Shown piece after piece: positions 1,473-57,880 of a DNA stretch of 64,000 nucleotides (its first letter is position 1; every line of letters begins with the position of its first letter). The notes beneath the pieces were generated by a model that saw only the letters and a program-made list of their open reading frames with translations, was not told where the DNA came from and did no database searches. A program made the position numbers and the translations under genes. The stretch spans positions 1 to 64,000 of IMG/VR virus record IMGVR_UViG_3300033145_003233; one strand, given 5' to 3'.

Positions 1473-4400
1473 TTAACTCCAAGTAGTAATTTCTATTTTA
1501 GCCATTTCTACACTGCTCGCATCGTGCATCGTAATCTTTAACCATATTCCCCATCCTGGCCCAGTTCCAACAGCAGTAAAACCTCCTGTTCCAAGGGTAA
1601 AATCTAAACTAGGCATAGTTGTCCCAGGATTAACCCTACATCCGTCTCCATTATTTAAAGCTCCCCCTCCATATAATTCGTTACAATTATACCAATCAGT
1701 TCCATCTAAACTAATTTCTATAATAACATCATCATCTGTTAAATTTTGTTCTGTAACTCCAGTAATATTAAATGTACCATTAGAATGAGCAGTCCCATTA
1801 TGCCACATCCCCCTATAAAAATATCTGTCATTTGCGAGAGAAGAATAATCTGGTTGACTACCAGAACTAGGTTCATAAGCTCCATAATTTACAGATGGAT
1901 AAAATAATTTTGTTCCCTCCCCCACTTGTAACCCCTGACCATCATCAGCAGAAGCTAAGCTAGCTGTGCTATCCCAAGGAGTAGATAAATCATCCTCTAA
2001 TCTCTCATCTTCACTTGTAAAATCTTCCACAATCGCCGTAGAATTATCATTATAAGTATCTATGATAATGGAAGCATTAGCAGAATTAGTATTAGCTCCA
2101 TATCCACTCCAATCCCGAGTATCTGCATATATATTTGCTGTAGTCGTCATAGTATATAGATTAGAACTGCTGATAGTTAAAGCAGCATTAGAATAAGAAG
2201 CATTAACATTATTATAAACATTCGTCCAACTTGTTAAATCTCCTCCAGTTATACTATCAGTAGATATTCCATACTCAGTACATACTAATCTAGCAAAAGT
2301 AGAAAGATAAGTATCTGAATTCATATAATCTAAATCAGCAATAGCCCCTGTAAAAGTGCTACCAGTATCATAATAATAAACGCCTGACTTACGCAAAATG
2401 ACAGGAGTATTCTCTGCTATAGTTACTCCAGATATTGCTTGAGCATTAGGCTCAAGGTCATAAAAAATATTATTTTGTGTATATGTTTGATCCCCATCTC
2501 CAGCATCATGATGGATAATCTCAACACTAAATCTGCCCGATTGTAAAGTATCAAGTATAGTGTCAATATTAAACGTCACTGTTATAATCCCCTTATATTG
2601 ATCAGTATCTGCTGCCCAACTAGTTACTTCTATTTGAATATTGTCTACTGTGACATCAGTATTCCCTGTAATAGCAGCAGTAGTATGAGTTGCTAAAGTA
2701 CTTACTCCATCAGCATCATATACATTAACTTCTATAGTCGTTGTAGAATTATCTTTAAAACTACATGTATTAGAATTAGAACTATAAACACAACTAGCGA
2801 CAGAAGCCCTGATAGCACTTACTGTATCTCCTCCCGACCAGCTTCCTATATTAAAAGGATTACCTTCACCAGTCGGAGCCGCCACAAGTCTGCTAGTTAC
2901 ATTCTTATCATCCACTCTACAATCATTCGTTCCATTATTATCATCAAAATTAGAGACATAAGATGGAGGAGGAACATACACATTTACTTCCCCACTTACA
3001 CAATCTTTTGCCTGAACTGTAGCTCCTTTAAAATTGATAGTAGTTACATTTCCACAAATTAAACTGCCCTCATCTTCTACATTTAAAGACCATCCTCCAA
3101 AATCATGCCCATGTAAGTCATCAGCATTATTAGAAGGGCCACCAACCAATCCCCAATATTGATCTGTATTTAAATGATAATATTCCCCAACCTCTCCTCC
3201 TTGAATACCCACTAGCTCACTATGATCTATAGTAGTATTAATCCATACCGAACCACTCCATTTTAAATATTCATTTGTTTGAAGGTCTATAAGAGAGACA
3301 TCATATAAATCTGACATATTTAAATAACTAGAAGTAAGATCGAATATAGTTGTGCAATAATAATTACCTCCTATTTCTACAATTGTTATTTCATCTCCAT
3401 CATATAGACGAGGGGTTGCCGCATTTAAATCTTCATCTACTGAAGGGTTACTTCCGACAATCAAACAAATAACATTTGCTGGAGTACCGTCTGGAGTATC
3501 TAAATTACATAAAATAACATTTCCTTCAGAAGCATCTTCCTGACAATAAGCTTTTCTACCAGAACCTGAACCGGAAGTGCCGGAACTACCAGCTGAACCA
3601 GAGCTACCTGAACTACCTGATGAACCTGAGCTACCCGAAGTTCCACTACTTCCTGAGCTACCAGAAGTTCCTGAGCTTCCTGAGCTACCACTACTACCTG
3701 ATGTACCGGAGCTACCACTACTACCTGATGAACCTGAGCTACCACTACTACCTGATGTACCGGAGCTACCACTACTACCTGATGTACCGGAGCTACCACT
3801 ACTACCTGATGTACCGGAGCTACCAGCCTCTCCTCCTCCAAACGGAACTCCATTTCCCCAGTATTCATCACAAACAGAAGGATTTCCTAAAACACTAGGA
3901 TTAGCAGGAGGAGTATCATTCCTAAAATATAATAGTCCATTATCAGTATCTAAAAAACTAAATCCTTCTAGTTCATCTATATAATCACAAAGTTCGTTAA
4001 CAGGGCCTTGTACGTCTACACTAAATGAAACACCATCTTGACCTGAGCTACCGGAGCTACCACTACTACCTGAGCTACCACTACTACCTGAGCTACCAGA
4101 GCTACCACTGCTACCTGATGTCCCTGCCGAAGGAATACTAAATATTGTCGTACAATAGTAAACGCTATTTATTTCTACAACTGTAATTTTATCACCATCA
4201 AACAAACGAGGTATAGCATTATTTAAATCTTCATCTACTGAAGGATTGTTACCTGCTATAAAACAAATAACATTTATAAGTGTTCCACCTGGAGTATCTA
4301 GACTACATAAAATAATATTACCTTCAGAAGCATCTTCCTGACAATAAGCCACAGTGCCGATGCCGCTGCCCGTACCCGAAGTCCCAGAAGAACCAGCACT

Positions 4401-5039
4401 TCCCGATGTCCCACTACTGCCAGCACTTCCACCAGCACCTGTCCCTGAATGAACGTGACAACAATCAGCATTACTACCATCAAGTAATTTTCTAAAATTA
4501 ACTATTATGAAAGGGTCTTCATCATCTATATGTTCTAAAAGAGTGTGTGCTTCATCGTGAGCTTTAGTAACAGTATCCTCAATTGTAGCTCCATCAGAAG
4601 ATACATCTGATAATTGATTAATGCTTCCATCTTTTCTTACATACTCATCTATCTCCAAACCATTAATAGCATTATCTATTCCGGTTTGTAATTCAGAATC
4701 TGTTATAAGAGTAGAATGAGTATGTAAACTATCTGCATCAGAGGAAGGTCCTATCGTTAGAATATCTAATCCGCTATGAGTATGAACCTCTAAAGCCCTA
4801 TCATCATGAGTATGCATATACCCAGTAGTAGATATTCTAGGAGGATCTGTTCCTACTCCAACTAGAAGATTTCTATAAACATCAGAAGCAGCCAACCTCT
4901 CAGGAGTGGTGTAGTCTAATGCTTCAATTGTTTCTCCTGGTTGTATCCACGACATCCCCGGTATATCAAAAATTCTTAATCTAACCGGAGAAACATTGGT
5001 TATTTCCCAAGATTCTCTCGGATGCTGAATGTCCGCCAT
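1473..5039 (-). CDS. Tail fibre-like virion protein, 1188 aa, with GSS repeats, HxH motifs and a twice-repeated ~70-aa module
   Basis: Three G-S-S tracts; HTH/HVH/HGH motifs typical of trimeric metal-binding fibre shafts; beta-rich C-terminal half. Confidence 0.75.
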   Translation of the reverse strand: MADIQHPRESWEITNVSPVRLRIFDIPGMSWIQPGETIEALDYTTPERLAASDVYRNLLVGVGTDPPRISTTGYMHTHDDRALEVHTHSGLDILTIGPSSDADSLHTHSTLITDSELQTGIDNAINGLEIDEYVRKDGSINQLSDVSSDGATIEDTVTKAHDEAHTLLEHIDDEDPFIIVNFRKLLDGSNADCCHVHSGTGAGGSAGSSGTSGSAGSSGTSGTGSGIGTVAYCQEDASEGNIILCSLDTPGGTLINVICFIAGNNPSVDEDLNNAIPRLFDGDKITVVEINSVYYCTTIFSIPSAGTSGSSGSSGSSGSSGSSGSSGSSGSSGQDGVSFSVDVQGPVNELCDYIDELEGFSFLDTDNGLLYFRNDTPPANPSVLGNPSVCDEYWGNGVPFGGGEAGSSGTSGSSGSSGTSGSSGSSGTSGSSGSSGSSGSSGSSGTSGSSGSSGSSGTSGSSGSSGTSGSSGSSGSSGSSGSAGSSGTSGSGSGRKAYCQEDASEGNVILCNLDTPDGTPANVICLIVGSNPSVDEDLNAATPRLYDGDEITIVEIGGNYYCTTIFDLTSSYLNMSDLYDVSLIDLQTNEYLKWSGSVWINTTIDHSELVGIQGGEVGEYYHLNTDQYWGLVGGPSNNADDLHGHDFGGWSLNVEDEGSLICGNVTTINFKGATVQAKDCVSGEVNVYVPPPSYVSNFDDNNGTNDCRVDDKNVTSRLVAAPTGEGNPFNIGSWSGGDTVSAIRASVASCVYSSNSNTCSFKDNSTTTIEVNVYDADGVSTLATHTTAAITGNTDVTVDNIQIEVTSWAADTDQYKGIITVTFNIDTILDTLQSGRFSVEIIHHDAGDGDQTYTQNNIFYDLEPNAQAISGVTIAENTPVILRKSGVYYYDTGSTFTGAIADLDYMNSDTYLSTFARLVCTEYGISTDSITGGDLTSWTNVYNNVNASYSNAALTISSSNLYTMTTTANIYADTRDWSGYGANTNSANASIIIDTYNDNSTAIVEDFTSEDERLEDDLSTPWDSTASLASADDGQGLQVGEGTKLFYPSVNYGAYEPSSGSQPDYSSLANDRYFYRGMWHNGTAHSNGTFNITGVTEQNLTDDDVIIEISLDGTDWYNCNELYGGGALNNGDGCRVNPGTTMPSLDFTLGTGGFTAVGTGPGWGIWLKITMHDASSVEMAKIEITTWS
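3570..3826 (-). repeat. In-frame (Gly-Ser/Thr-Ser)n tract; shorter tracts at about 4040-4125 and 4370-4440
   Basis: Tandem ctgatgtaccggagctaccactactac units within the 1188-aa ORF. Confidence 0.9.
4263..4349. repeat. 87-bp segment nearly identical to 1-87; third, more diverged copy at about 3464-3552
   Basis: Direct comparison: 3 mismatches in 87 nt between 1-87 and 4263-4349. Confidence 0.9.
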
Positions 5040-6586: not shown

Positions 6587-6672
6587 TTCAAATCTCCTTT
6601 ACTAACTCTAACTCTATACTAACACTAACTTTACATTAAAAACCATTCCACACGAATGGTCAATCTTTCCCT

Positions 6673-6700
6673 ATTATACCATAAATTTTTCACTTTTCAA
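6673..6700 (-). promoter_or_regulatory. sigma70-like promoter TTGAAA-AGTGA-N-TG-n-TATAAT (16-bp spacer)
   Basis: Same architecture at 6791-6818, 7755-7782 and 45496-45523. Confidence 0.7.
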
Positions 6701-6701
6701 G

Positions 6702-6740
6702 AAAAAAATAAAAAGGCAGAACCCAACGAATCCTGCCTTT
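6702..6740 (-). terminator. Intrinsic terminator
   Basis: AAAGGCAG/CTGCCTTT stem plus T-rich tail. Confidence 0.7.
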
Positions 6741-6788
6741 CTTCCCCGCCTCCATGTCCCCCCAGAAAACATATCTTCATTCTCCATG
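6702..6788 (-). ncRNA. Candidate GGA-rich small RNA (possible CsrA/RsmA sponge) or 29-aa micro-ORF
   Basis: Bounded by the promoter at 6791-6818 and the terminator at 6702-6740; ACATGGAG twice plus 3 more GGA. Confidence 0.35.
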
Positions 6789-6790
6789 TT

Positions 6791-6818
6791 ATTATACCAT
6801 TATTTTTTCACTTTACAA
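6791..6818 (-). promoter_or_regulatory. sigma70-like promoter TTGTAA-AGTGA...TGG-TATAAT
   Basis: Near-copy of the 6673-6700 promoter. Confidence 0.7.
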
Positions 6819-7568
6819 GTTTATTTTTAAAATATTTGACATTTCATTATAAAACCTGATATCATATTTATTCATTTGTCTTAATAACTTACGAACTTTT
6901 TTATCTTTCCATCCAACTCTAGGCTTATTCTTCGAAACATTACTCCTTTTTAGAGATTTTTTCTTCCATCCTAATTTATCACTTAATTTCTTAAAATCAT
7001 TAACATAATTCTCTTGAAAACCTACAAAATAATAATTATTCAAAAGATTGTACTTTGCTGCTTCATAAAATTTCTCCATTTCATCTTCAGAATATTTCTT
7101 TTTCCTTGAAGTGTAAATATATGTATATTTTATTCCTGGCACTCTAATAATATTAGAAAGATCTTCTAATCCCGATAGCATCTTTACCATTACATTACAA
7201 TGCATATCATTTTTTAAAACATAGCTCAAAAAAGAAATTATATTCCCCCTAGCTTTCTTTATCCATAATTCTCTGCGATAAGAGGTATTTGTAGTAAAAA
7301 TAGTTTTATTAAAAAAAGATTTCCATCTTGATATAGGATTTCTTAAAAAAGTAATATATTTAATATCTTTGGTATCTGGAAAATATTTATGACACCCATA
7401 AGCCACATGCCCTACAGCAAATTTATATTTGTCTGGATAAGAAGGAGGAGGATCACTGTATTCTTTCCTATGAAACCTTGTAACGGTTCTCTTTCTGCGA
7501 TATTCTTTATAAGAATATTCTATTAAAGCCCTACCACCTGTCCTCGGTATATGTGTGAAAATTATCAT
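6813..7568 (-). CDS. Sulfotransferase family (Sulfotransfer_2-like) protein
   Basis: 5'-PSB-like IFTHIPRTGG and 3'-PB-like FLRNPISRWKS motifs; terminal DIRFY motif. Confidence 0.75.
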   Translation of the reverse strand: MIIFTHIPRTGGRALIEYSYKEYRRKRTVTRFHRKEYSDPPPSYPDKYKFAVGHVAYGCHKYFPDTKDIKYITFLRNPISRWKSFFNKTIFTTNTSYRRELWIKKARGNIISFLSYVLKNDMHCNVMVKMLSGLEDLSNIIRVPGIKYTYIYTSRKKKYSEDEMEKFYEAAKYNLLNNYYFVGFQENYVNDFKKLSDKLGWKKKSLKRSNVSKNKPRVGWKDKKVRKLLRQMNKYDIRFYNEMSNILKINL

Positions 7569-7581
7569 AAAGACCTTTTAA

Positions 7582-7629
7582 ATAGTTACCATACAACTAT
7601 GAGAATTAAAAGATTTGTATGGTAACTAT
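7582..7629. repeat. Perfect 15-bp inverted repeat with 18-nt spacer in the sulfotransferase leader
   Basis: ATAGTTACCATACAA (7582-7596) / TTGTATGGTAACTAT (7615-7629). Confidence 0.85.
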
Positions 7630-7637
7630 ATATCGAC

Positions 7638-7668
7638 AAAAAAAGAGCAGAACCTAAATCCTGCTCTT
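7638..7668 (-). terminator. Intrinsic terminator
   Basis: AAGAGCAG/CTGCTCTT stem plus T7. Confidence 0.75.
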
Positions 7669-7748
7669 AGGGCCATAGTTGAATAAAAATTCAACTTGCC
7701 TCCACCAGATAGGTTAAGCCTATCACTCTATGAGTGTATTGGTATACA
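7638..7748 (-). ncRNA. Candidate ~110-nt multi-hairpin small RNA
   Basis: Promoter at 7755-7782; hairpins CACTC/GAGTG, GATAGG/CCTATC and AGTTGAAT/ATTCAACT, then terminator. Confidence 0.4.
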
Positions 7749-7754
7749 TACTAT

Positions 7755-7782
7755 ATTATATCATATTCTTTTCACTTTTCAA
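7755..7782 (-). promoter_or_regulatory. sigma70-like promoter TTGAAA-AGTGA...TGA-TATAAT
   Basis: Third copy of the AGTGA promoter class. Confidence 0.7.
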
Positions 7783-7997
7783 TATAATTCTCCCATCTTA
7801 ATTAACTCTTCTGCTCTCTTGTCTTTTATACTTGGCCCCATTCTATATAGACGCTCCCCCCACCTTTTCTTCCTCTTTGCCTCTCTCTTCTTCTCTTGCC
7901 TCTTATGATCTGCAAATATTTTAGAAACCCTTTTAGGATTGAATAAGGCAACAAAAGCTGTTAATATACAAGTAATAAATAATCTTATTCTCTTCAT
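7779..7997 (-). CDS. Small basic protein with N-terminal hydrophobic segment (likely start MKRIRLF, 72 aa)
   Basis: Start reassigned because the upstream extension overlaps the 8026 gene; GCCGATAT box at 8004-8011; ends KRAEELIKMGELY like the LAGLIDADG gene. Confidence 0.65.
   Translation of the reverse strand: MKRIRLFITCILTAFVALFNPKRVSKIFADHKRQEKKREAKRKKRWGERLYRMGPSIKDKRAEELIKMGELY
7783..7820. repeat. 38-bp direct repeat (copy 1); copy 2 at 9786-9823; partial copies at 9344-9372 and about 9020-9050
   Basis: TATAA(T/C)TCTCCCATCTTAATTAACTCTTCTGCTCTCTT, 1 mismatch between the full copies. Confidence 0.9.
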
Positions 7998-8025
7998 ATC
8001 TTTATATCGGCAAAAAAGAAAAAGA

Positions 8026-8652
8026 CTAAATAGTTGTTCCTTGAGGAACCTCATCAGGAAATGTGTGATTGTCAATGATTTGCTTATATTTGTTATAAAC
8101 ATTAAAAGCTCTTTCGCTGCTTTCACCTCCTATCCTTCTAGAATTATGATTCAACATAGCAATAGCTTTATCTCTAGTCGAACAATTTAACAACATCCCC
8201 TCAAAACCTCCCATATCTTCAATCCTTTGTTTCATCTTTATAGAATGTTCTTGAACTAATTCTGGATGGTCTATAAATTTCTTTCGAGCAGCTTCTGATC
8301 GCCCTCTCCATTGATCTAATAAATTTAATCTCTCTAAAGCTTTAAACACTGTTGTAAGATTAGTTCCATATTGTTTAGTTATCTGTTGAGCAGTCATGCC
8401 TTTTCCCCTAGGAGGTAAAAGATAAAGACTTGCAAGATATTCATCCTTTTTTCTCCTGTATTCTACAAGATCCCTCCATTGATACTTCTTGTTTAATCTT
8501 TCGATAGTATGACTATTTACTCCAAACATCTTCGCTATACTTAAAAAAGACTTGCCTTGATTTACTAATCTCTCCATTTCTGCCAATTCTTTACTACTCC
8601 ATCCTCTTGGAGCAGCAAATGCTATCTTTAATTGCTTTTTATACCAATTCAT
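8026..8652 (-). CDS. Double HTH protein with MNWYKK leader
   Basis: SFLSIAKMFGVNSHTIERL and MTAQQITKQYGTNLTTVFKAL HTH-like segments. Confidence 0.7.
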   Translation of the reverse strand: MNWYKKQLKIAFAAPRGWSSKELAEMERLVNQGKSFLSIAKMFGVNSHTIERLNKKYQWRDLVEYRRKKDEYLASLYLLPPRGKGMTAQQITKQYGTNLTTVFKALERLNLLDQWRGRSEAARKKFIDHPELVQEHSIKMKQRIEDMGGFEGMLLNCSTRDKAIAMLNHNSRRIGGESSERAFNVYNKYKQIIDNHTFPDEVPQGTTI

Positions 8653-9022
8653 AATTTTTTTTAATATAATTTAATATATAATACTGAGGAAAATTCGGAA
8701 ACATTCTCCAATATTTACTTATTAATTTCATATTCACTTCTTTCTCTTTGGATTTTATAAAATCTATAACATGATCTATCCTATGATCATTTTCGCTTCT
8801 ATCCTCTACCTCAGGATATAAAATTGATGCCTTCTCTTGATAACTCATCTCATCAGGAGGCCTACCAAAATCCTTAGCTTTATAGTCCATATAATCTTCT
8901 TTCACAAATGGAGGATCATCACTATGAAAATAATCATATAATTGCTGATGAGTTTCAGGCATGCGCCTTTTCTTCTCTACTGACCATTCTTGAGATTCGA
9001 TAATTCGATTATACCAATTCAT
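8639..9022 (-). CDS. Hypothetical protein with MNWY leader (start reassigned to 9022)
   Basis: MNWYNRIIESQ start matches the leader family. Confidence 0.7.
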   Translation of the reverse strand: MNWYNRIIESQEWSVEKKRRMPETHQQLYDYFHSDDPPFVKEDYMDYKAKDFGRPPDEMSYQEKASILYPEVEDRSENDHRIDHVIDFIKSKEKEVNMKLISKYWRMFPNFPQYYILNYIKKNYELV

Positions 9023-9064
9023 ACTAATATAATTCACCAATTTTTATCAAATTCCTGCAATGGT

Positions 9065-9346
9065 TTATTTTATGGGTATCAACCCATGCTTACTGATATG
9101 CTCTCTATTATCTTCTATGTATTTTTCTAACTCTTGATCAGTTTGATAGATGCCAGGATCATTTTGAAAGTCTGATTTATTCTCAGACATATATTTAAGA
9201 ACGAAAACATAACTACAAATTTCACATGACAAAACTCTTAAAAACTTCCTCTTTTGACATTCCTTATCATCTACTACTCCATCAAAATGCTTGATATGCT
9301 CATCTATACTTCTATCCATCTCTTCCCACATTTCTTCCAGACCCAT
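9065..9346 (-). CDS. Hypothetical protein
   Basis: Start sits directly after a junction repeat carrying a GGGAG SD. Confidence 0.7.
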   Translation of the reverse strand: MGLEEMWEEMDRSIDEHIKHFDGVVDDKECQKRKFLRVLSCEICSYVFVLKYMSENKSDFQNDPGIYQTDQELEKYIEDNREHISKHGLIPIK

Positions 9347-9368
9347 TAGTATAATTCTCCCATCTTAA

Positions 9369-9782
9369 TTAATCTAAAATGTTCTTAACTGCTATCACCT
9401 CATCTTTATATCGGTCTTCATATGTTCCAATCATATGTTCCATAAATTCATAAACTAATCCCATAAAACGATGGGTTTTTTCAAATTTATCTACAATGCT
9501 ATTGGATGGGAAGGCCTCTACCCAATCACAAGGATATGTTGTCTCGTCAGTTAACTTATATACTGTTATTGTATACATAGACTGCTGGAATTGTAAAAAA
9601 TCACTTTTAGTGATAAAAGGAAAAACCTTTATAGCTAAAAAAGCGTCAACCTCTTCTTCCTCAACCCCATCTGGATATTCTAATGAAGCAGCTATATCCA
9701 TCCCTCCTCTTCCAAAAATATATATTAATTCTATTTTTTTACCAACTAATCTTGAATAATATTTACCTATTTCTAATTTCAT
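9369..9782 (-). CDS. Hypothetical protein
   Basis: Start coupled (TAATG) to the homing endonuclease stop within the junction repeat. Confidence 0.7.
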   Translation of the reverse strand: MKLEIGKYYSRLVGKKIELIYIFGRGGMDIAASLEYPDGVEEEEVDAFLAIKVFPFITKSDFLQFQQSMYTITVYKLTDETTYPCDWVEAFPSNSIVDKFEKTHRFMGLVYEFMEHMIGTYEDRYKDEVIAVKNILD

Positions 9783-10549
9783 TAGTATAACTCTCCCATC
9801 TTAATTAACTCTTCTGCTCTCTTTATATGTATCGGTAAAAACCTAGGACGGCCACGATCACTTAATCGATAGGTCTTAATCTTGCCAATCTTTACAAGAT
9901 GACTGAGACGATTGTAAGAAACTCCTAACTCCTTGCTAACTTCTTTCATTCTCTTACTCTCAAATCTCCAACTAGGAAGATCGAATTTATAGTCGTAACA
10001 TTTGACTGGACTAGTTCTACCTATGTAGTTGAAAAAGGCAGGGATGCCACGAGCTTTGATAAAGACTCTGTTACAGTCATCTCTATGAGCTTTTATTCCC
10101 ACTTTTCTAATTTTCTCTGCTAAAAATTCAACCTCTTCCGGCAAAAAACCATCTGTTGCAAAACGGACCATTATTCTTTTGCCCTTATCGGGTTGAGTAA
10201 CTGACCCATCCCCTAAATACCACATCATAACTGAAGTAGGCGTAATTTCCACATCCTTAGGAACAGATTTATATCTTTTACCATCTTTATATCTATACCA
10301 TCTCAAACACTGCTTAAAGAAATAAGAATGATACATCGTTCTTCCTGCAAAAACATATCCTTGCTTCATATTCGCAGAATTATATTTTGATACAGAAGCA
10401 TTATAATCCTTGAAAGGACTCATCAGATACTCACAGAACTCCTTATACTGCAAACTACAAGTAGCTCTAGCTACATCTCTTTTTAATCTTTTATCAACAG
10501 ATAAACAGCCATCTCCTAATAAAAAACCATCTATATATTCATTACTCAT
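9782..10549 (-). mobile_element. Free-standing LAGLIDADG homing endonuclease with C-terminal HTH
   Basis: Two motifs YIDGFLLGDG and MWYLGDGS, plus FATDGF; directly downstream of the capsid gene terminator. Confidence 0.85.
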
Positions 10550-10585
10550 AAATCACCCCTAAATATCATTTTAACTAATGGGTAT

Positions 10586-10616
10586 AAAAAGAGTGGGCTA
10601 TAAAAACCCACTCTTT
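10586..10616 (-). terminator. Intrinsic terminator after the major capsid gene
   Basis: AAAGAGTGGG/CCCACTCTTT 10-bp stem plus T-run. Confidence 0.8.
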
Positions 10617-10647
10617 AAATTTTAACTAAATGCTCTTAATTCAAAGA

Positions 10648-11520
10648 TTAAGATGCATTGGCATCCGTCATATTAATCCTGCTGATAGCATAGTTATTTA
10701 CCACTACGATACCAACTTCCTCGTATATGACCCAGCCGAGCCTTAATTTCTTTGGATCGTCAGCAGGCAGAACTGTGATGTCCTGTCTGATTGGAAAAGC
10801 CCCTACTGTTTCAGGGCTAGCAACGATAAGAACTGTCGTGCTGCTCATTCTTGAAGATACGTGAATATCGGCTGTCCACAAGTGACCATATAGGCCAGTT
10901 GTTATAATTTCACGCTGAGTTGCTTCATCAAAGAAGTCCTTACCAAATGTACGAATGCTAGCATATTGGAAAGCATGCGTAACTATTTTAGCGGCAACAA
11001 GGTCATGCTGCTCTATCTGCTTAAAAGCCTCATTCAAAGCTGCAACAGTCAGAGTTCCATAGTTTGTAATGGTCTGAGCTGCTGTGCAGGCAGTCAATAA
11101 AGCGTTAAAGATATTGCTATCCTCTTCTTTTTGTATAGCTTCTTTAGCTTTAATCTGGGCACGGTCTACAATGTAGAACCTTCTTGCCTTGATCTCACTA
11201 AGTCTTACTGTTGGGTTAGCGGCGATCTCGAATGTAGGTACGAGAACCTCTTCACCCTCTTGAATCTGATCAGGTACAGCACCTCTACGAGATACTACCC
11301 ATGCTATTGCAGCAACGTCTCTCTCATAACGAGCAAGAGCGCCCTGTGGTAGTTCATCAACCATGAGAAGTTTTCTTCCAACTGCTTGATATTCCAACGC
11401 CCTACGAATAGGTTCTACCATTGCTTGAGCAAGGGCAGTTCTGCCTTCATCTGTTTCCAGAGCCTGAGCAATGACCATCTCTTTCTCTGAATCTGTTAAA
11501 CCATTTTTATCAAAAGCCAT
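10648..11520 (-). CDS. Major capsid protein (HK97 fold, compact ~290 aa)
   Basis: ALAQAMVEPIRRALEYQAVGRKLLMVDELPQG and GWVIYEEVG motifs recalled from phage G-like capsid proteins; strong SD; last gene of protease-decoration-MCP order; own terminator. Confidence 0.85.
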   Translation of the reverse strand: MAFDKNGLTDSEKEMVIAQALETDEGRTALAQAMVEPIRRALEYQAVGRKLLMVDELPQGALARYERDVAAIAWVVSRRGAVPDQIQEGEEVLVPTFEIAANPTVRLSEIKARRFYIVDRAQIKAKEAIQKEEDSNIFNALLTACTAAQTITNYGTLTVAALNEAFKQIEQHDLVAAKIVTHAFQYASIRTFGKDFFDEATQREIITTGLYGHLWTADIHVSSRMSSTTVLIVASPETVGAFPIRQDITVLPADDPKKLRLGWVIYEEVGIVVVNNYAISRINMTDANAS

Positions 11521-55427: not shown

Positions 55428-57880
55428 CTAGATTATAAGTTCTTCTACTAGTGTCCCATTGACAACTATTTGAAGACTTCCTTCTTCCGCTATATATTCT
55501 ATATAAACATCTTCATCTTCTCCCTCAATAGAAGAACTGCTGGAGCTTACAGAGCTGCTTGAGCTTACGGAACTACTTGAGCTACTCACAGATGAGCTAC
55601 TTGAACTTACCGAGCTACTTGAACTTGAAACTGATGAACTACTAACAGATGAACTGCTCGAACTTGAAACAGACGAACTGCTTACTAAACTACTACTTGA
55701 GCTTATAGAACTAGAGCTTACAGAACTAGAGCTTACAGAACTAGAGCTACTGCTAACCGAAGAACTACTAACTGAACTACTGCTTGAGCTTATAGAACTA
55801 GAGCTTACAGAACTAGAGCTACTACTAACCGAAGAACTACTAACGGAAGAACTGCTTGAACTTATTGAGCTACTAGAGCTGCTATCTTCTGCTACACTAC
55901 TACTACTTGAACTTACTGAACTACTTGAACTTGAAACCGAAGAACTACTAACAGATGAGCTGCTTGAGCTTACTGAACTACTTGAGCTTGAAACTGATGA
56001 GCTACTAACAGATGAGCTGCTTGAACTTACTGAACTACTTGAGCTTGAAACTGATGAGCTACTAACAGATGAGCTACTTGAACTTACTGAACTACTTGAG
56101 CTTGAAACTGATGAGCTACTAACAGATGAGCTACTTGAGCTTACTGAACTACTTGAGCTTGAAACTGATGAGCTACTAACAGATGAGCTACTTGAGCTTA
56201 CTGAACTACTTGAGCTTGAAACTGAAGAACTACTAACTGAACTACTGCTAGAGCTTACAGAACTAGAGCTTACAGAACTAGAGCTGCTACTAACCGAAGA
56301 ACTACTAACTGAAGAACTGCTTGAGCTTATTGAACTACTAGAGCTGCTATCTTCTGCTGCGCTACTGACCGAAGAACTACTTACTGAACTGCTGCTAGAA
56401 CTTACCGAACTACTTAAGCTTGAAACTGACGAACTACTTACTGAACTGCTGCTAGAACTTACCGAACTACTTGAGCTTGAAACTGATGAGCTACTTACTG
56501 AACTAGAGCTTGAACTTATAGAGCTAGAACTTACAGAACTAGAGCTTACAGAACTAGAGCTGCTACTAACCGAAGAACTACTAACTGAAGAACTGCTTGA
56601 GCTTATTGAACTACTAGAGCTGCTATCTTCTGCTGCGCTACTGAAGAACTGCTTACTGAACTACTTGAACTACTAATTGATGAGCTACTTACAGAGCTGC
56701 TAGAACTTGAAACTGACGAACTGCTTACTGAACTACTAGAACTTGAAACTGACGAACTGCTTACTGACGAACTGCTTGAGCTTACTGAACTACTTGAACT
56801 TGAAACTGACGAACTGCTTACTGAGCTACTAGAACTTGAAACTGACGAGCTGCTTACCGAACTACTGCTTGAACTTACTGAGCTACTTGAGCTTGAGACT
56901 GATGAACTGCTAACAGATGAACTGCTAGAGCTTACTGAACTACTTGAGCTTGAGACTGATGAACTACTTATAGAAGAACTTGAGCTTGAGACTGATGAAC
57001 TACTTACAGAAGAACTTGAGCTTGAGACTGATGAACTACTTACAGAAGAACTTGAGCTTGAGACTGATGAACTACTTATAGAAGAACTTGAGCTTGAGAC
57101 TGATGAACTACTTACTGATGAACTGCTAGAACTTACTGAACTACTGCTGACAGATGAGCTACTAGAACTTACTGAACTACTAGAGCTTGAAATTGATGAA
57201 CTGCTTGATGATCCCTCCGGCAATATTTCAAGAAGATGACCACAATTTTCGTCACTAAAACCACCAGCCCAGTCAATTATTATTGAATCAGGTGCCCCGC
57301 CTATTTTATCTCCGACATAGAAACTTTCATCTTGAGAAGTAGAACCTCCTCCAGTCTCACCATTAGCGATTTGAAAAAATCCAGCACCTCCTGTAGTAAC
57401 AGGAGATCCATCTGCTCCATAAGCACAAGCCACTGCAAATAATGTACTTCCTGTTGTTGCCGAGCCAGATGGCAGAACAGTTGTTGTTGTAAGACTATTA
57501 TTTACATCTTCACTGAGAAAATTAGTAGCATCGGCTACTGAGCTATTAATCGTTCCAAGATAATTAACTGCCGTGGAATGAGTATGGGCATCAGTAGTTT
57601 GTGTAAAAGTAATATTAGCGATTCCGGGAGAGGGATTAACTCGCCCATAAGTAGTGATTTTTTTATCTCCGCCACTAGAAGTGTCATTTGTAGTAGCATC
57701 AATAATAGAAAGAGTCTCAGTTGTATTCCCTGCAGGTGCAATACTAATACTCTCATTAGCATCCTGAGTAACAGTGACAACAAGGAGAGTCGTCCCTTCA
57801 TCAACCTCATGCACATAAGTTATCTCACTTGCATTATCGGTCAATGTATATGTTGTATATTGTCCTCTAGTTATTGCCAT
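55428..57880 (-). CDS. Giant poly-Ser virion/adhesin-like protein interrupted by one frameshift near 56642 (about 818 codons if restored)
   Basis: ORF 56603-57880 drifts out of frame. The Ser frame continues without stops in the segments checked to ...SIEGEDEDVYIEYIAEEGSLQIVVNGTLVEELII* at 55428. Confidence 0.75.
55530..57211 (-). repeat. About 560-codon low-complexity (S4-7-V/I)n tract with three S-A/V-A-E-D punctuation units
   Basis: Hierarchical gagctact/gaactact repeats; AED units near 55885, 56350 and 56628. Confidence 0.92.

What the first reader, a model, noticed from the sequence alone, without database searches (positions are those of the whole stretch)
7783..9823. Gene-cassette array with repeated junctions downstream of the capsid gene and its homing endonuclease
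Seen: a 38-bp repeat (1 mismatch) encodes the same C-terminus KRAEELIKMGELY* in two unrelated genes (LAGLIDADG and the 7779 gene). A 29-bp copy precedes the 9346 start, and a decayed copy (LIKIGELY*) precedes the 9022 start. The repeat supplies stop, GGGAG SD and often the coupled ATG. Inference: new genes were inserted repeatedly at one site with target duplication, giving a plug-in array that can expand or excise between repeats, possibly driven by endonuclease breaks.
Basis: partly seen in the sequence, partly recalled or inferred. Interest (0 to 1): 0.63.

Follow-up and report, generated by a model that had tools for sequence, protein, structure and literature searches.

The report
Homing-endonuclease tail reused as cassette junction
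In a 548-kb phage, the last 8-20 codons of a homing-endonuclease gene next to the capsid gene recur as a stop, ribosome-site and start junction between small accessory genes, and related phages gain, lose and reorder whole genes exactly at these junctions.

Summary
The repeats are real. There are four copies, all on the minus strand of this one locus, and none elsewhere in the 548-kb genome. They are not a neutral target duplication. The repeat is the conserved native 3' end of an I-SceI-like LAGLIDADG-HTH homing endonuclease gene (HEG): 55 of 120 homologues end in GELY. This "J" junction has TAA in all three frames, a GGAG Shine-Dalgarno and an ATG overlapping the stop. HEG-tail remnants of 8 to about 27 codons lie downstream of the HEG in 10 of 46 non-redundant related loci, always on the HEG strand, and usually abut the next start codon. 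The same cargo families sit between J copies in different orders. A close relative (L178) shares only the J-o93-J block with the window. Homology starts at J copy B and ends at a second 14-nt repeat, the MNWY gene start. The 7779 gene is a 53-aa family member that reads through into an HEG remnant. The genome has no integrase or resolvase, but it has a RecA/UvsX-like gene. The best reading is that HEG-tail footprints are kept as translation-initiation junctions and serve as short portable homology for cassette shuffling, as T4 PeSLs do. A role for endonuclease cleavage is untested.

The parts
10648..11520 (-). Major capsid protein gene, the conserved left anchor of the locus
   Evidence: phrog_2522 major head protein, E 1.2e-64. 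80 related loci were fetched with it, at 70-96% aa identity.
10587..10616 (-). Terminator-like hairpin plus T-run just after the capsid stop
   Evidence: Read directly from the sequence. An equivalent hairpin follows the capsid stop in all 7 relatives aligned. The scan missed it because its loop is 9 nt.
9782..10549 (-). LAGLIDADG-HTH homing endonuclease gene (255 aa, I-SceI-like), intact
   Evidence: PF03161 E 2.8e-12 and a weak MerR/HTH_17 match at residues 200-248. phrog_11023 E 2.5e-24. The profile matches I-SceI structures at E 1e-7 to 3e-9. Both GDG motifs (D13, D114) are invariant in 28 homologues. The gene is present after the capsid gene in 17 full-length plus 4 fragmentary of 80 relatives.
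9780..9823 (-). J copy A: the native HEG 3' end (KRAEELIKMGELY*), with GGAG and an ATG overlapping the stop that starts o137
   Evidence: The same C-terminus is conserved across the HEG family.
9369..9782 (-). o137, cassette gene of unknown function
   Evidence: No Pfam or PHROG hit. One homologue (61% identity) on L177, also preceded by an HEG tail with TAATG and ending in a degenerate J-like tail. Absent from the other fetched loci.
9344..9372 (-). J copy B, 29 nt and non-coding in the HEG frame. It supplies the o137 stop (a TAA inside the TTAATTAA start of J), GGAG, and the o93 ATG
   Evidence: It is the left edge of nucleotide homology with L178: 27/29 in J against 45% upstream.
9065..9346 (-). 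o93, cassette gene of unknown function
   Evidence: Six homologues at 60-84% identity. In L178, L179 and L180 it follows a methylase N-half gene plus an HEG remnant. In L181 and L182 it sits in a context without J.
9022..9050 (-). J copy C (LIKIGELY*), a remnant of a different HEG allele, directly before the o127 ATG
   Evidence: It differs from the other copies at 7 sites, all third codon positions. LIKIGELY is a natural tail of other family members. The o93-stop to gene-start stretch that holds this copy is 56/60 identical in L178.
9009..9022 (-). MNWY start repeat, copy 1 (14 nt, ATGAATTGGTATAA), the start of o127
   Evidence: It is the right edge of homology with L178.
8639..9022 (-). o127 (MNWYNR..., 127 aa), unknown function. 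It is an indel relative to L178, bounded by the two MNWY repeats
   Evidence: No family or Atlas lead.
8639..8652 (-). MNWY start repeat, copy 2: the start of o208, which also encodes the last codons and stop of o127 in another frame
8026..8652 (-). o208 (MNWYKK..., two HTH motifs), family F4
   Evidence: HTH_23 E 2.9e-6. PHROG hits match only the DNA-binding parts of HNH endonucleases and invertases. Paralogue arrays follow the HEG in L010. Homologues occur in L004, L006, L115 and L178.
7998..8017 (-). Left part of a roughly 60-nt HEG 3' remnant (codons for FLPI.IK) that follows the o208 stop
   Evidence: Aligns with the uninterrupted remnant after the F4 gene in L178 and with the window's own HEG end.
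7779..7997 (-). o72 (family F8, small protein with a hydrophobic N-terminus), inserted inside the HEG remnant and reading through into it
   Evidence: Homologues in L101 (64% identity) and L129 are 53 aa and end ...RM*, with a short J right after.
7779..7820 (-). J copy D: right part of the HEG remnant (KRAEELIKMGELY*), now the C-terminus of o72. Its stop overlaps the next promoter
7755..7782 (-). Promoter-like site (TTGAAA, 16 nt, TGnTATAAT) that closes the array
   Evidence: 11 of 12 consensus positions with an extended -10. The same motif occurs at least 12 times in the genome, all on the minus strand. It abuts the HEG stop in L004, L007 and L009.

Best explanation
Shown: a free-standing I-SceI-like LAGLIDADG-HTH homing endonuclease gene sits just after the major capsid gene in a clade of very large phages. 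Its last eight codons (LIKxGELY, then stop) have a strongly conserved DNA sequence. That sequence carries TAA in all three frames, a GGAG Shine-Dalgarno and an ATG overlapping the stop, so it is also the translation-initiation region of whatever gene follows. I call it J. Inferred: when an endonuclease copy is displaced or deleted, its J end (8 to about 27 codons) survives because the downstream gene needs it. These footprints then act as short portable homology. Unequal or Campbell-type homologous recombination between J copies, within a genome or between co-infecting relatives, adds, removes and reorders the small genes between them. It would use the phage's own RecA/UvsX-type machinery. Any inserted ORF is terminated by J and the next gene is restarted, so insertions are tolerated in any frame. 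The window holds one intact HEG and three footprints bounding o137, o93 and the o127-o208-o72 block. A second short repeat, the 14-nt MNWY gene start, works in the same way for o127. Speculative: cleavage by the endonuclease near the capsid gene may raise the local recombination rate.
For: J is the native HEG end: 55 of 120 homologues end in GELY, and G252, E253, L254 and Y255 are invariant in 28 aligned homologues. It is specific and oriented: 43 unique J hits in 1.96 Mb of related loci, all on the HEG strand, against 1 in a shuffle, and only 4 in the 548-kb genome, all here. Footprints recur: 10 of 46 non-redundant HEG-bearing loci with at least 1.5 kb downstream have J remnants downstream and none upstream. 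Some remnants carry in-frame stops or frameshifts, in L115, L123 and L178. Remnants differ from the resident HEG tail in L004, L008 and window copy C, whose 7 differences are all at third codon positions. This means they diverged while coding. The junction function fits: 14 of 20 remnants have the ATG at the TAATG overlap. GGAG lies upstream of 25% of long ORFs against 5% of random positions. J is unstructured as RNA. Cassette behaviour: families F9, F8, F16, F2 and F17 sit between J copies in different orders in different loci. Window and L178 share only the block from J(B) through o93 and copy C, with edges at J(B) and the MNWY repeat: 45%, 93%, 86%, 93% and 47% identity across the five segments. 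L178 and L179 have the methylase N-half gene, then J, then o93, where the window has HEG, J, o137, J, o93. Machinery: a RecA-like gene at E 1.4e-43, and no RecT, ERF, tyrosine or serine recombinase in the genome.
Against: No recombination event was observed. No sequencing runs could be listed, so junction-spanning or circular reads were not sought. Cargo proteins are as diverged between loci (37-79% identity) as the HEGs are, so the rearrangements are old and could be rare illegitimate events sorted by selection. J copies within a genome are only weakly more alike than copies between genomes (permutation p = 0.03), which argues against frequent gene conversion. Stretches of 23-60 nt are short for RecA-type recombination. 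The near-identity of copies A, B and D (1-3 differences) is also what a recent in-situ duplication would give.
Confidence: 0.6

Rival explanations
1. Passive footprints only. Successive invasion, decay and replacement of homing-endonuclease copies (the HEG life cycle) left 3' stubs. The stubs are kept because they carry the next gene's ribosome site. Genes between them arrived by unrelated illegitimate events, and J plays no part in recombination.
For: Remnant lengths vary from 8 to about 27 codons and the alleles differ. Some remnants carry stops or frameshifts. Cargo divergence is old. Within-genome homogenisation is weak. J remnants also occur in loci without the HEG, L006 and L022.
Against: The same cargo families are J-flanked on both sides in different neighbourhoods: F9 in three loci, and o93 in the window and L178. 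Homology blocks between relatives end exactly at J or MNWY repeats. Left edges of many remnants cluster at the first base of the 8-codon unit. Copies A, B and D in the window, and two copies in L100, are nearly or fully identical, although the genes they flank are diverged or unique.
Confidence: 0.25
2. Site-specific insertion. J, or a site overlapping it, is recognised and cut by an enzyme: this LAGLIDADG protein, its C-terminal HTH domain, or the F4 HTH proteins. Cassettes are captured there with duplication of the site, so the HEG acts as the integrase of a phage cassette array.
For: J is 27-29 bp, a plausible size for a LAGLIDADG site, and starts with an 8-bp palindrome. All copies share the HEG's orientation and lie within 3 kb downstream of it. 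The window's copies A, B and D are near-identical. HTH-only F4 proteins accompany the arrays in the window, L004, L010, L115 and L178.
Against: An enzyme that cut its own gene's 3' end would cut every genome that carries it. Duplication lengths are not fixed (23, 28, 38 and about 60 nt). Remnants are often a different allele from the resident tail. There are no inverted repeats and no hairpin. The genome has no transposase, integrase or resolvase.
Confidence: 0.1
3. Chance or convergence: an AT-rich ribosome-site consensus that happens to recur.
For: GGAG-type sites are common upstream of genes in this genome.
Against: Shuffles give 0 matches for the 38-mer. Only these four places in 548 kb match at 5 mismatches or fewer. 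Longer remnants continue into recognisable HEG codons, FLPIHIKRAEEL.
Confidence: 0.02

Closest known systems
PeSL regulatory cassettes of T4-type phages (Arbiol et al. 2010, PMC2839356; Comeau et al. 2014, PMC4122927)
   Same: Both are short conserved regulatory motifs that flank small non-essential ORFan genes in hyperplastic regions. In both, insertions, deletions and replacements between close relatives have their edges in the motif. In the PeSL papers, recombination between copies is proposed, and shown via mini-circles, as the shuffling mechanism. No dedicated recombinase is involved.
   Different: A PeSL is a promoter plus a stem-loop terminator, so it works at the level of transcription. 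J is the coding 3' end of a homing-endonuclease gene plus a Shine-Dalgarno and an overlapping start, so it works at the level of translation, and it has no stem-loop. J is confined to one locus next to the capsid gene rather than spread over the genome. PeSL-like promoter-plus-hairpin units do lie just beyond the array, at 7643-7782 and 6641-6818.
Free-standing homing endonuclease genes at boundaries of genetic exchange (Barth, Dunham and Seed 2023, PMC10448857), and SegB-driven segmental amplification (PMC13096335)
   Same: The HEG sits next to an essential, conserved gene (the capsid gene). Its distribution among relatives is patchy. Its neighbourhood is a hot spot of gene turnover.
   Different: Those papers describe HEGs bracketing large islands that move by co-conversion, or amplification of segments. 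Here the reusable element is the HEG's own 3' stub, which persists after the enzyme gene is gone and bounds single small genes.
Integron gene-cassette arrays
   Same: Both are co-oriented arrays of small, promoterless genes of varied function separated by a recurring junction, and content varies between relatives.
   Different: There is no IntI or any tyrosine or serine recombinase in the genome. J has no attC-like imperfect palindrome or hairpin. The junction is derived from a coding sequence.
HEG life-cycle footprints (invasion, degeneration, loss; established from fungal and organellar HEGs)
   Same: Truncated and stop-containing HEG remnants sit at the homing locus, and the remnant and resident copies are of different alleles.
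   Different: The footprints here are trimmed to a functional unit (stop, SD, start), are kept upstream of many different genes, and mark the edges of exchanged units.

Membership tests
LAGLIDADG homing endonuclease (I-SceI-like, PF03161) | Two LAGLIDADG motifs with conserved acidic residues in one chain | tested here: met
   PF03161 E 2.8e-12 over residues 5-155. G12-D13-G14 and G113-D114-G115 are invariant in 28 homologues. The profile matches I-SceI chains.
LAGLIDADG homing endonuclease (I-SceI-like, PF03161) | Sporadic presence or absence at a fixed locus among close relatives | tested here: met
   Found directly after the capsid gene in 17 full-length plus 4 fragmentary of 80 capsid-related loci. 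It is absent from several loci with 90-94% identical capsid (L005, L006, L011, L012).
LAGLIDADG homing endonuclease (I-SceI-like, PF03161) | Site-specific double-strand cleavage of the HEG-free allele | not testable with these tools
   The intergenic alignment of HEG-bearing and HEG-free relatives was too diverged to locate an insertion point.
Integron | Adjacent IntI tyrosine recombinase | tested here: not met
   No PF00589 match in the 548-kb genome, while all 14 control genomes matched.
Integron | attC sites that fold as imperfect hairpins | tested here: not met
   The four J copies with flanks fold at 0 to -8 kcal/mol, with z-scores from -1.4 to +1.1.
PeSL-type shuffling cassette | The motif is a sigma-70-like promoter plus a stem-loop terminator | tested here: not met
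   J holds no strong promoter match and no stem-loop; only a weak 9-of-12 site overlaps copy C. The separate units at 7643-7782 and 6641-6818 do have this form.
PeSL-type shuffling cassette | Indels and replacements between close relatives have their edges in the motif | tested here: met
   The window and L178 homology block ends at J(B) and at the MNWY repeat. L178 and L179 have a different left neighbour of o93. The o72 gene is inserted inside the remnant.
PeSL-type shuffling cassette | Excised mini-circles formed by recombination between copies | not testable with these tools
   No sequencing run was listed for this stretch.
Transposon insertion with target-site duplication | Fixed-length short duplication, terminal inverted repeats and a transposase | tested here: not met
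   Repeat lengths are 23, 28, 38 and about 60 nt. The only transposase-related Pfam matches in the array are sub-threshold, HTH-only hits on o208 (TnsD, HTH_Tnp_ISL3), with no catalytic domain. The genome has no serine or tyrosine recombinase.
Translationally coupled gene junction | Stop-start overlap with an SD at a suitable distance | tested here: met
   The TAATG overlap is at 9782 and 9346, with GGAG 10 nt upstream. 14 of 20 remnants in relatives keep the ATG at the overlap. Expression itself was not tested.

The most novel reading that the evidence does not exclude
The endonuclease, or its C-terminal HTH domain, actively uses J. On this reading the system is a recombinase-free, endonuclease-driven cassette-capture device: breaks or binding at J-like junctions recruit and fix new accessory genes beside the capsid gene. 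It would be a phage counterpart of the integron built from a selfish gene's own tail.
Probability: 0.12. Interest if true: 0.85.

Novelty: new variant of a known kind. Interest (0 to 1): 0.6.

Why it matters
Hypervariable ORFan islands are where phages keep host-takeover and counter-defence genes, and how genes get into them is known in detail only for T4-type PeSLs. This locus suggests a second route. A selfish endonuclease gene leaves behind a stub that terminates translation in any frame and restarts it. That stub becomes a standard connector for new genes, and the pattern holds across dozens of uncultured large phages. If confirmed, it links homing-endonuclease turnover directly to accessory-gene gain. 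It also gives a searchable signature, the J motif, for finding such islands. Finally, it offers a compact natural adaptor (three-frame stop, RBS and start) for operon design.

Tried and rejected
- Sequencing runs for 7400-10700: none was listed, so read laying was not used and joints between 7820 and 9823 could not be sought.
- The exact 23-mer of J in viral contigs gave 0 hits.
- o137 in viral contigs gave no relative.
- tRNA and Rfam scans of 5-12 kb found nothing.
- The J copies show no stable or shared RNA fold, so attC-like and PeSL-like hairpins were rejected.
- The Atlas look-alike search gave no usable function lead for o137 or o127.
- Aligning the capsid-to-next-gene spacers of HEG-bearing and HEG-free relatives to map the insertion site failed because they are too diverged.
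- Concerted evolution of J within genomes is only weak (p = 0.03), so frequent gene conversion is not claimed.
- Cargo proteins are not more similar between loci than the HEGs are, so there is no evidence for recent horizontal jumps.
- The HEG profile in genome contigs gave one weak partial hit and no host clue.
- A RecT, ERF, integrase or resolvase in the genome: none found.
- The large representative protein search, structure prediction and complex prediction were not run, because no claim here rests on them.
- No alternative genetic code was used.
Full report
**Setting**

The window is the first 64 kb of a 547,943-bp virus record that CheckV rates as complete. All genes in the finding lie on the minus strand. 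In reading order they are:
- major capsid gene, 11520 to 10648
- a hairpin with a T-run, about 10616 to 10587
- LAGLIDADG endonuclease gene (HEG), 10549 to 9782
- o137, 9782 to 9369
- o93, 9346 to 9065
- o127, 9022 to 8639
- o208, 8652 to 8026
- o72, 7997 to 7779
- a strong promoter-like site, 7782 to 7755

Pfam and PHROG identify the capsid protein (E 1.2e-64) and the endonuclease (PF03161 E 2.8e-12; phrog_11023 E 2.5e-24). The endonuclease also has a weak MerR/HTH_17-type helix-turn-helix match at residues 200-248. o208 matches only HTH motifs. o137, o93 and o127 match nothing.

**Observation**

The 38-nt repeat (7783-7820 and 9786-9823, 1 mismatch) never appears in shuffles. A 23-mer is exact at 9350-9372. 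In register, the four copies all end a frame that reads LIK[M/I]GELY followed by a stop. I call the common unit J:
- It begins with the 8-bp palindrome TTAATTAA.
- Four variable bases follow.
- Then comes GGAGAATTATAY.
- It ends with TAATG.

Across the genome only these four places match J at 5 or fewer mismatches out of 25 specified positions, and noise begins at 6 mismatches.

**What the repeat is**

The endonuclease has at least 199 homologues at E below 1e-10, the best non-self at 74% identity. Their C-termini read ...GRPRFLPxHIxxxxxLIKxGELY, and 55 of the 120 listed end in GELY. G252, E253, L254 and Y255 are invariant in a 28-sequence alignment. The repeat is therefore the native, conserved 3' end of the endonuclease gene, and the other copies derive from such genes.

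Copy C (9022-9050) differs from the others at 7 sites. All 7 are third codon positions, and the stop changes from TAA to TAG. Given the frame, the chance of that is about (1/3)^7. LIKIGELY is the natural tail of several family members. Copy C therefore diverged while it was coding and comes from a different allele. It is not in-situ decay.

**J as a junction**

- The TTAATTAA at the start of J gives TAA in two frames, and the HEG stop gives it in the third.
- o137 actually stops on one of the palindrome's TAA codons.
- GGAG lies 10 nt before an ATG that overlaps the stop.
- GGAG occurs upstream of 25% of ORFs of 150 aa or more, against 5% of random positions.
- J with its flanks has no stable RNA fold.

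**Relatives**

Eighty loci fetched with the capsid protein show that the HEG is present right after the capsid gene in about a quarter of them. The DNA further downstream is hypervariable. With 80 more loci fetched by an HEG profile, I found 43 unique J matches in 1.96 Mb. All are on the HEG strand, and a shuffle gave 1.

Ten of 46 non-redundant HEG-bearing loci with at least 1.5 kb downstream carry J remnants downstream of the HEG, and none carries one upstream. The remnants range from 8 codons to 17-27 codons of recognisable HEG sequence (FLPIHI...). Some have in-frame stops (L115, L123) or a 2-nt deletion (L178). Fourteen of 20 remnants have the next gene's ATG at the overlap position. In L004 and L008 the remnant is a different allele from the resident tail.

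**Cassettes**

Clustering of the downstream ORFs gives the following picture:
- F9 (119 aa) is flanked by J on both sides in L008, L100 and L123, with different neighbours in each.
- F16 follows a J in L100 and precedes one in L144.
- F2, the N-terminal half of an N6/N4 methylase, is followed by long remnants in L104, L106, L115, L178, L179 and L006.
- F8 is the family of o72.

o93 has six homologues, whose contexts were read:
- In L178 (84% identity) the order is F2, J, o93, a copy-C-type J, an MNWY/F4 gene, a roughly 60-nt HEG remnant, then an F17 gene.
- In L179 and L180 the order is F2, a 27-codon remnant, o93.

The only o137 homologue lies on L177, directly behind an HEG tail.

Nucleotide identity between the window and L178 runs as follows:

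| Segment (window coordinates) | Identity |
|---|---|
| Upstream of J(B), 9373-9420 | 19/42 (45%) |
| J(B), 9344-9372 | 27/29 (93%) |
| o93 coding, 9068-9343 | 228/264 (86%) |
| o93 stop to MNWY start, 9008-9067 | 56/60 (93%) |
| After the MNWY start, 8950-9007 | 27/58 (47%) |

The edges of the shared block therefore fall in J and in the 14-nt MNWY start. o127 is an indel bounded by two copies of that 14-mer (9009-9022 and 8639-8652). The second copy also encodes the last codons and stop of o127 in another frame.

**Copy D and the 7779 gene**

In L178 the F4 gene is followed by an uninterrupted remnant that matches the last 60 nt or so of the window's own HEG. In the window the same remnant is split. 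Its left 20 nt lie at 7998-8017, then comes o72, then the right part at 7779-7820. F8 homologues in L101 and L129 are 53 aa, end ...RM, and are followed by a short J. The shared C-terminus therefore arises because o72 reads through into the remnant. The remnant's stop overlaps a promoter motif that directly follows the HEG stop in L004, L007 and L009.

**Mechanism**

The genome encodes a RecA/UvsX-like protein (E 1.4e-43) but no RecT, ERF, tyrosine or serine recombinase. I favour, at about 0.6, the following model. HEG turnover leaves J footprints. Selection keeps them because they are the translation-initiation region of the next gene. Homologous recombination between J copies, and between MNWY starts, then shuffles the genes between them.

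The part that is shown: the identity of J, its recurrence, its orientation, cassette order that varies between loci, and exchange edges that lie in the repeats. The part that is inferred: recombination at J, rather than selection sorting rare illegitimate joins. Three results keep the passive-footprint rival alive at about 0.25:
- Cargo proteins are as diverged between loci as the HEGs are.
- Within-genome similarity of J copies is only slightly raised, p = 0.03.
- No reads were available.

Site-specific capture by the endonuclease is possible but disfavoured, at about 0.1.

**Comparison with known systems**

The closest analogue is the PeSL system of T4-type phages, in which promoter plus stem-loop units flank ORFans and recombine, producing mini-circles (PMC2839356, PMC4122927). 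The locus also fits the reports that HEGs sit beside essential genes at boundaries of exchange (PMC10448857) and can drive segmental amplification (PMC13096335). It is not an integron and not a transposon insertion. What is new here is the nature of the connector: the coding tail of a selfish gene reused as a three-frame stop, RBS and start.

**Limits**

Most relatives are short metagenomic contigs. The functions of all the cassette genes are unknown, and nothing here was observed to be expressed.

Noticed in passing
window 5592, 5814, 8652, 9022 (minus strand); 58906, 59285, 61432, 61975 (plus strand); genome 114891, 116937, 117563, 122138, 288218: Thirteen ORFs of unrelated sequence begin M[N/S]WY[K/N/R/S], mostly MNWYKK. 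One is a HicA-like toxin and another is an 809-aa protein. Several families in relatives (F4, F11, F18, F21) begin the same way. By my own rough estimate, about 0.02 such ORFs are expected by chance. The motif could be a shared N-terminal signal, for example virion targeting as with the T4 capsid-targeting sequence, or a portable 5' recombination junction. The 14-nt start also carries stops in the other two frames.
   Followed up: partly
window 7643-7782, 6710-6818, 6641-6700 (minus strand): There are three PeSL-like units: a promoter (TTGAAAAGTGAAA ... TGnTATAAT) followed 10-90 nt later by a GC-rich hairpin with a T-run, with no ORF between. The promoter motif occurs at least 12 times genome-wide, always on the minus strand. 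The units could make short RNAs or act as shuffling motifs. There was no Rfam or tRNA match.
   Followed up: partly
L070 8677-10777; L079 and L080 8739-10762; L077 10001-11258: In several relatives the capsid gene matches in two pieces. They are separated by about 1.1-1.2 kb near codon 33 in L070, L079 and L080, and by about 350 nt near codon 50 in L077. This suggests introns or other insertions inside the capsid gene.
   Followed up: no
genome 508529-508624 (outside the window): A 32-residue match (62% identity) to capsid residues 8-39 lies far from the capsid gene.
   Followed up: no
L115 6765-7958, L104 1270-2463, L006 11071-12906: The commonest gene after the HEG (family F2, 397 aa) matches only the first half of the N6/N4 DNA methylase profile (positions 2-107 of 221) and stops there. 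In seven of the fetched loci an HEG remnant follows it. In L006 it is fused to a LAGLIDADG_3 domain. It may be a methylase gene split by endonuclease insertion.
   Followed up: partly
L010 11801-14545: Three tandem paralogues of the o208 HTH family, each starting MNWY, directly follow the HEG. PHROG matches are to the DNA-binding parts of HNH endonucleases and invertases only.
   Followed up: no
window 1473-5039 and 55500-57250: A 1188-aa fibre-like protein has long Gly-Ser-Ser/Gly-Thr-Ser 9-nt repeats, also seen at 98-750. A separate 57-nt tandem repeat array lies at 55.8-57.2 kb.
   Followed up: no
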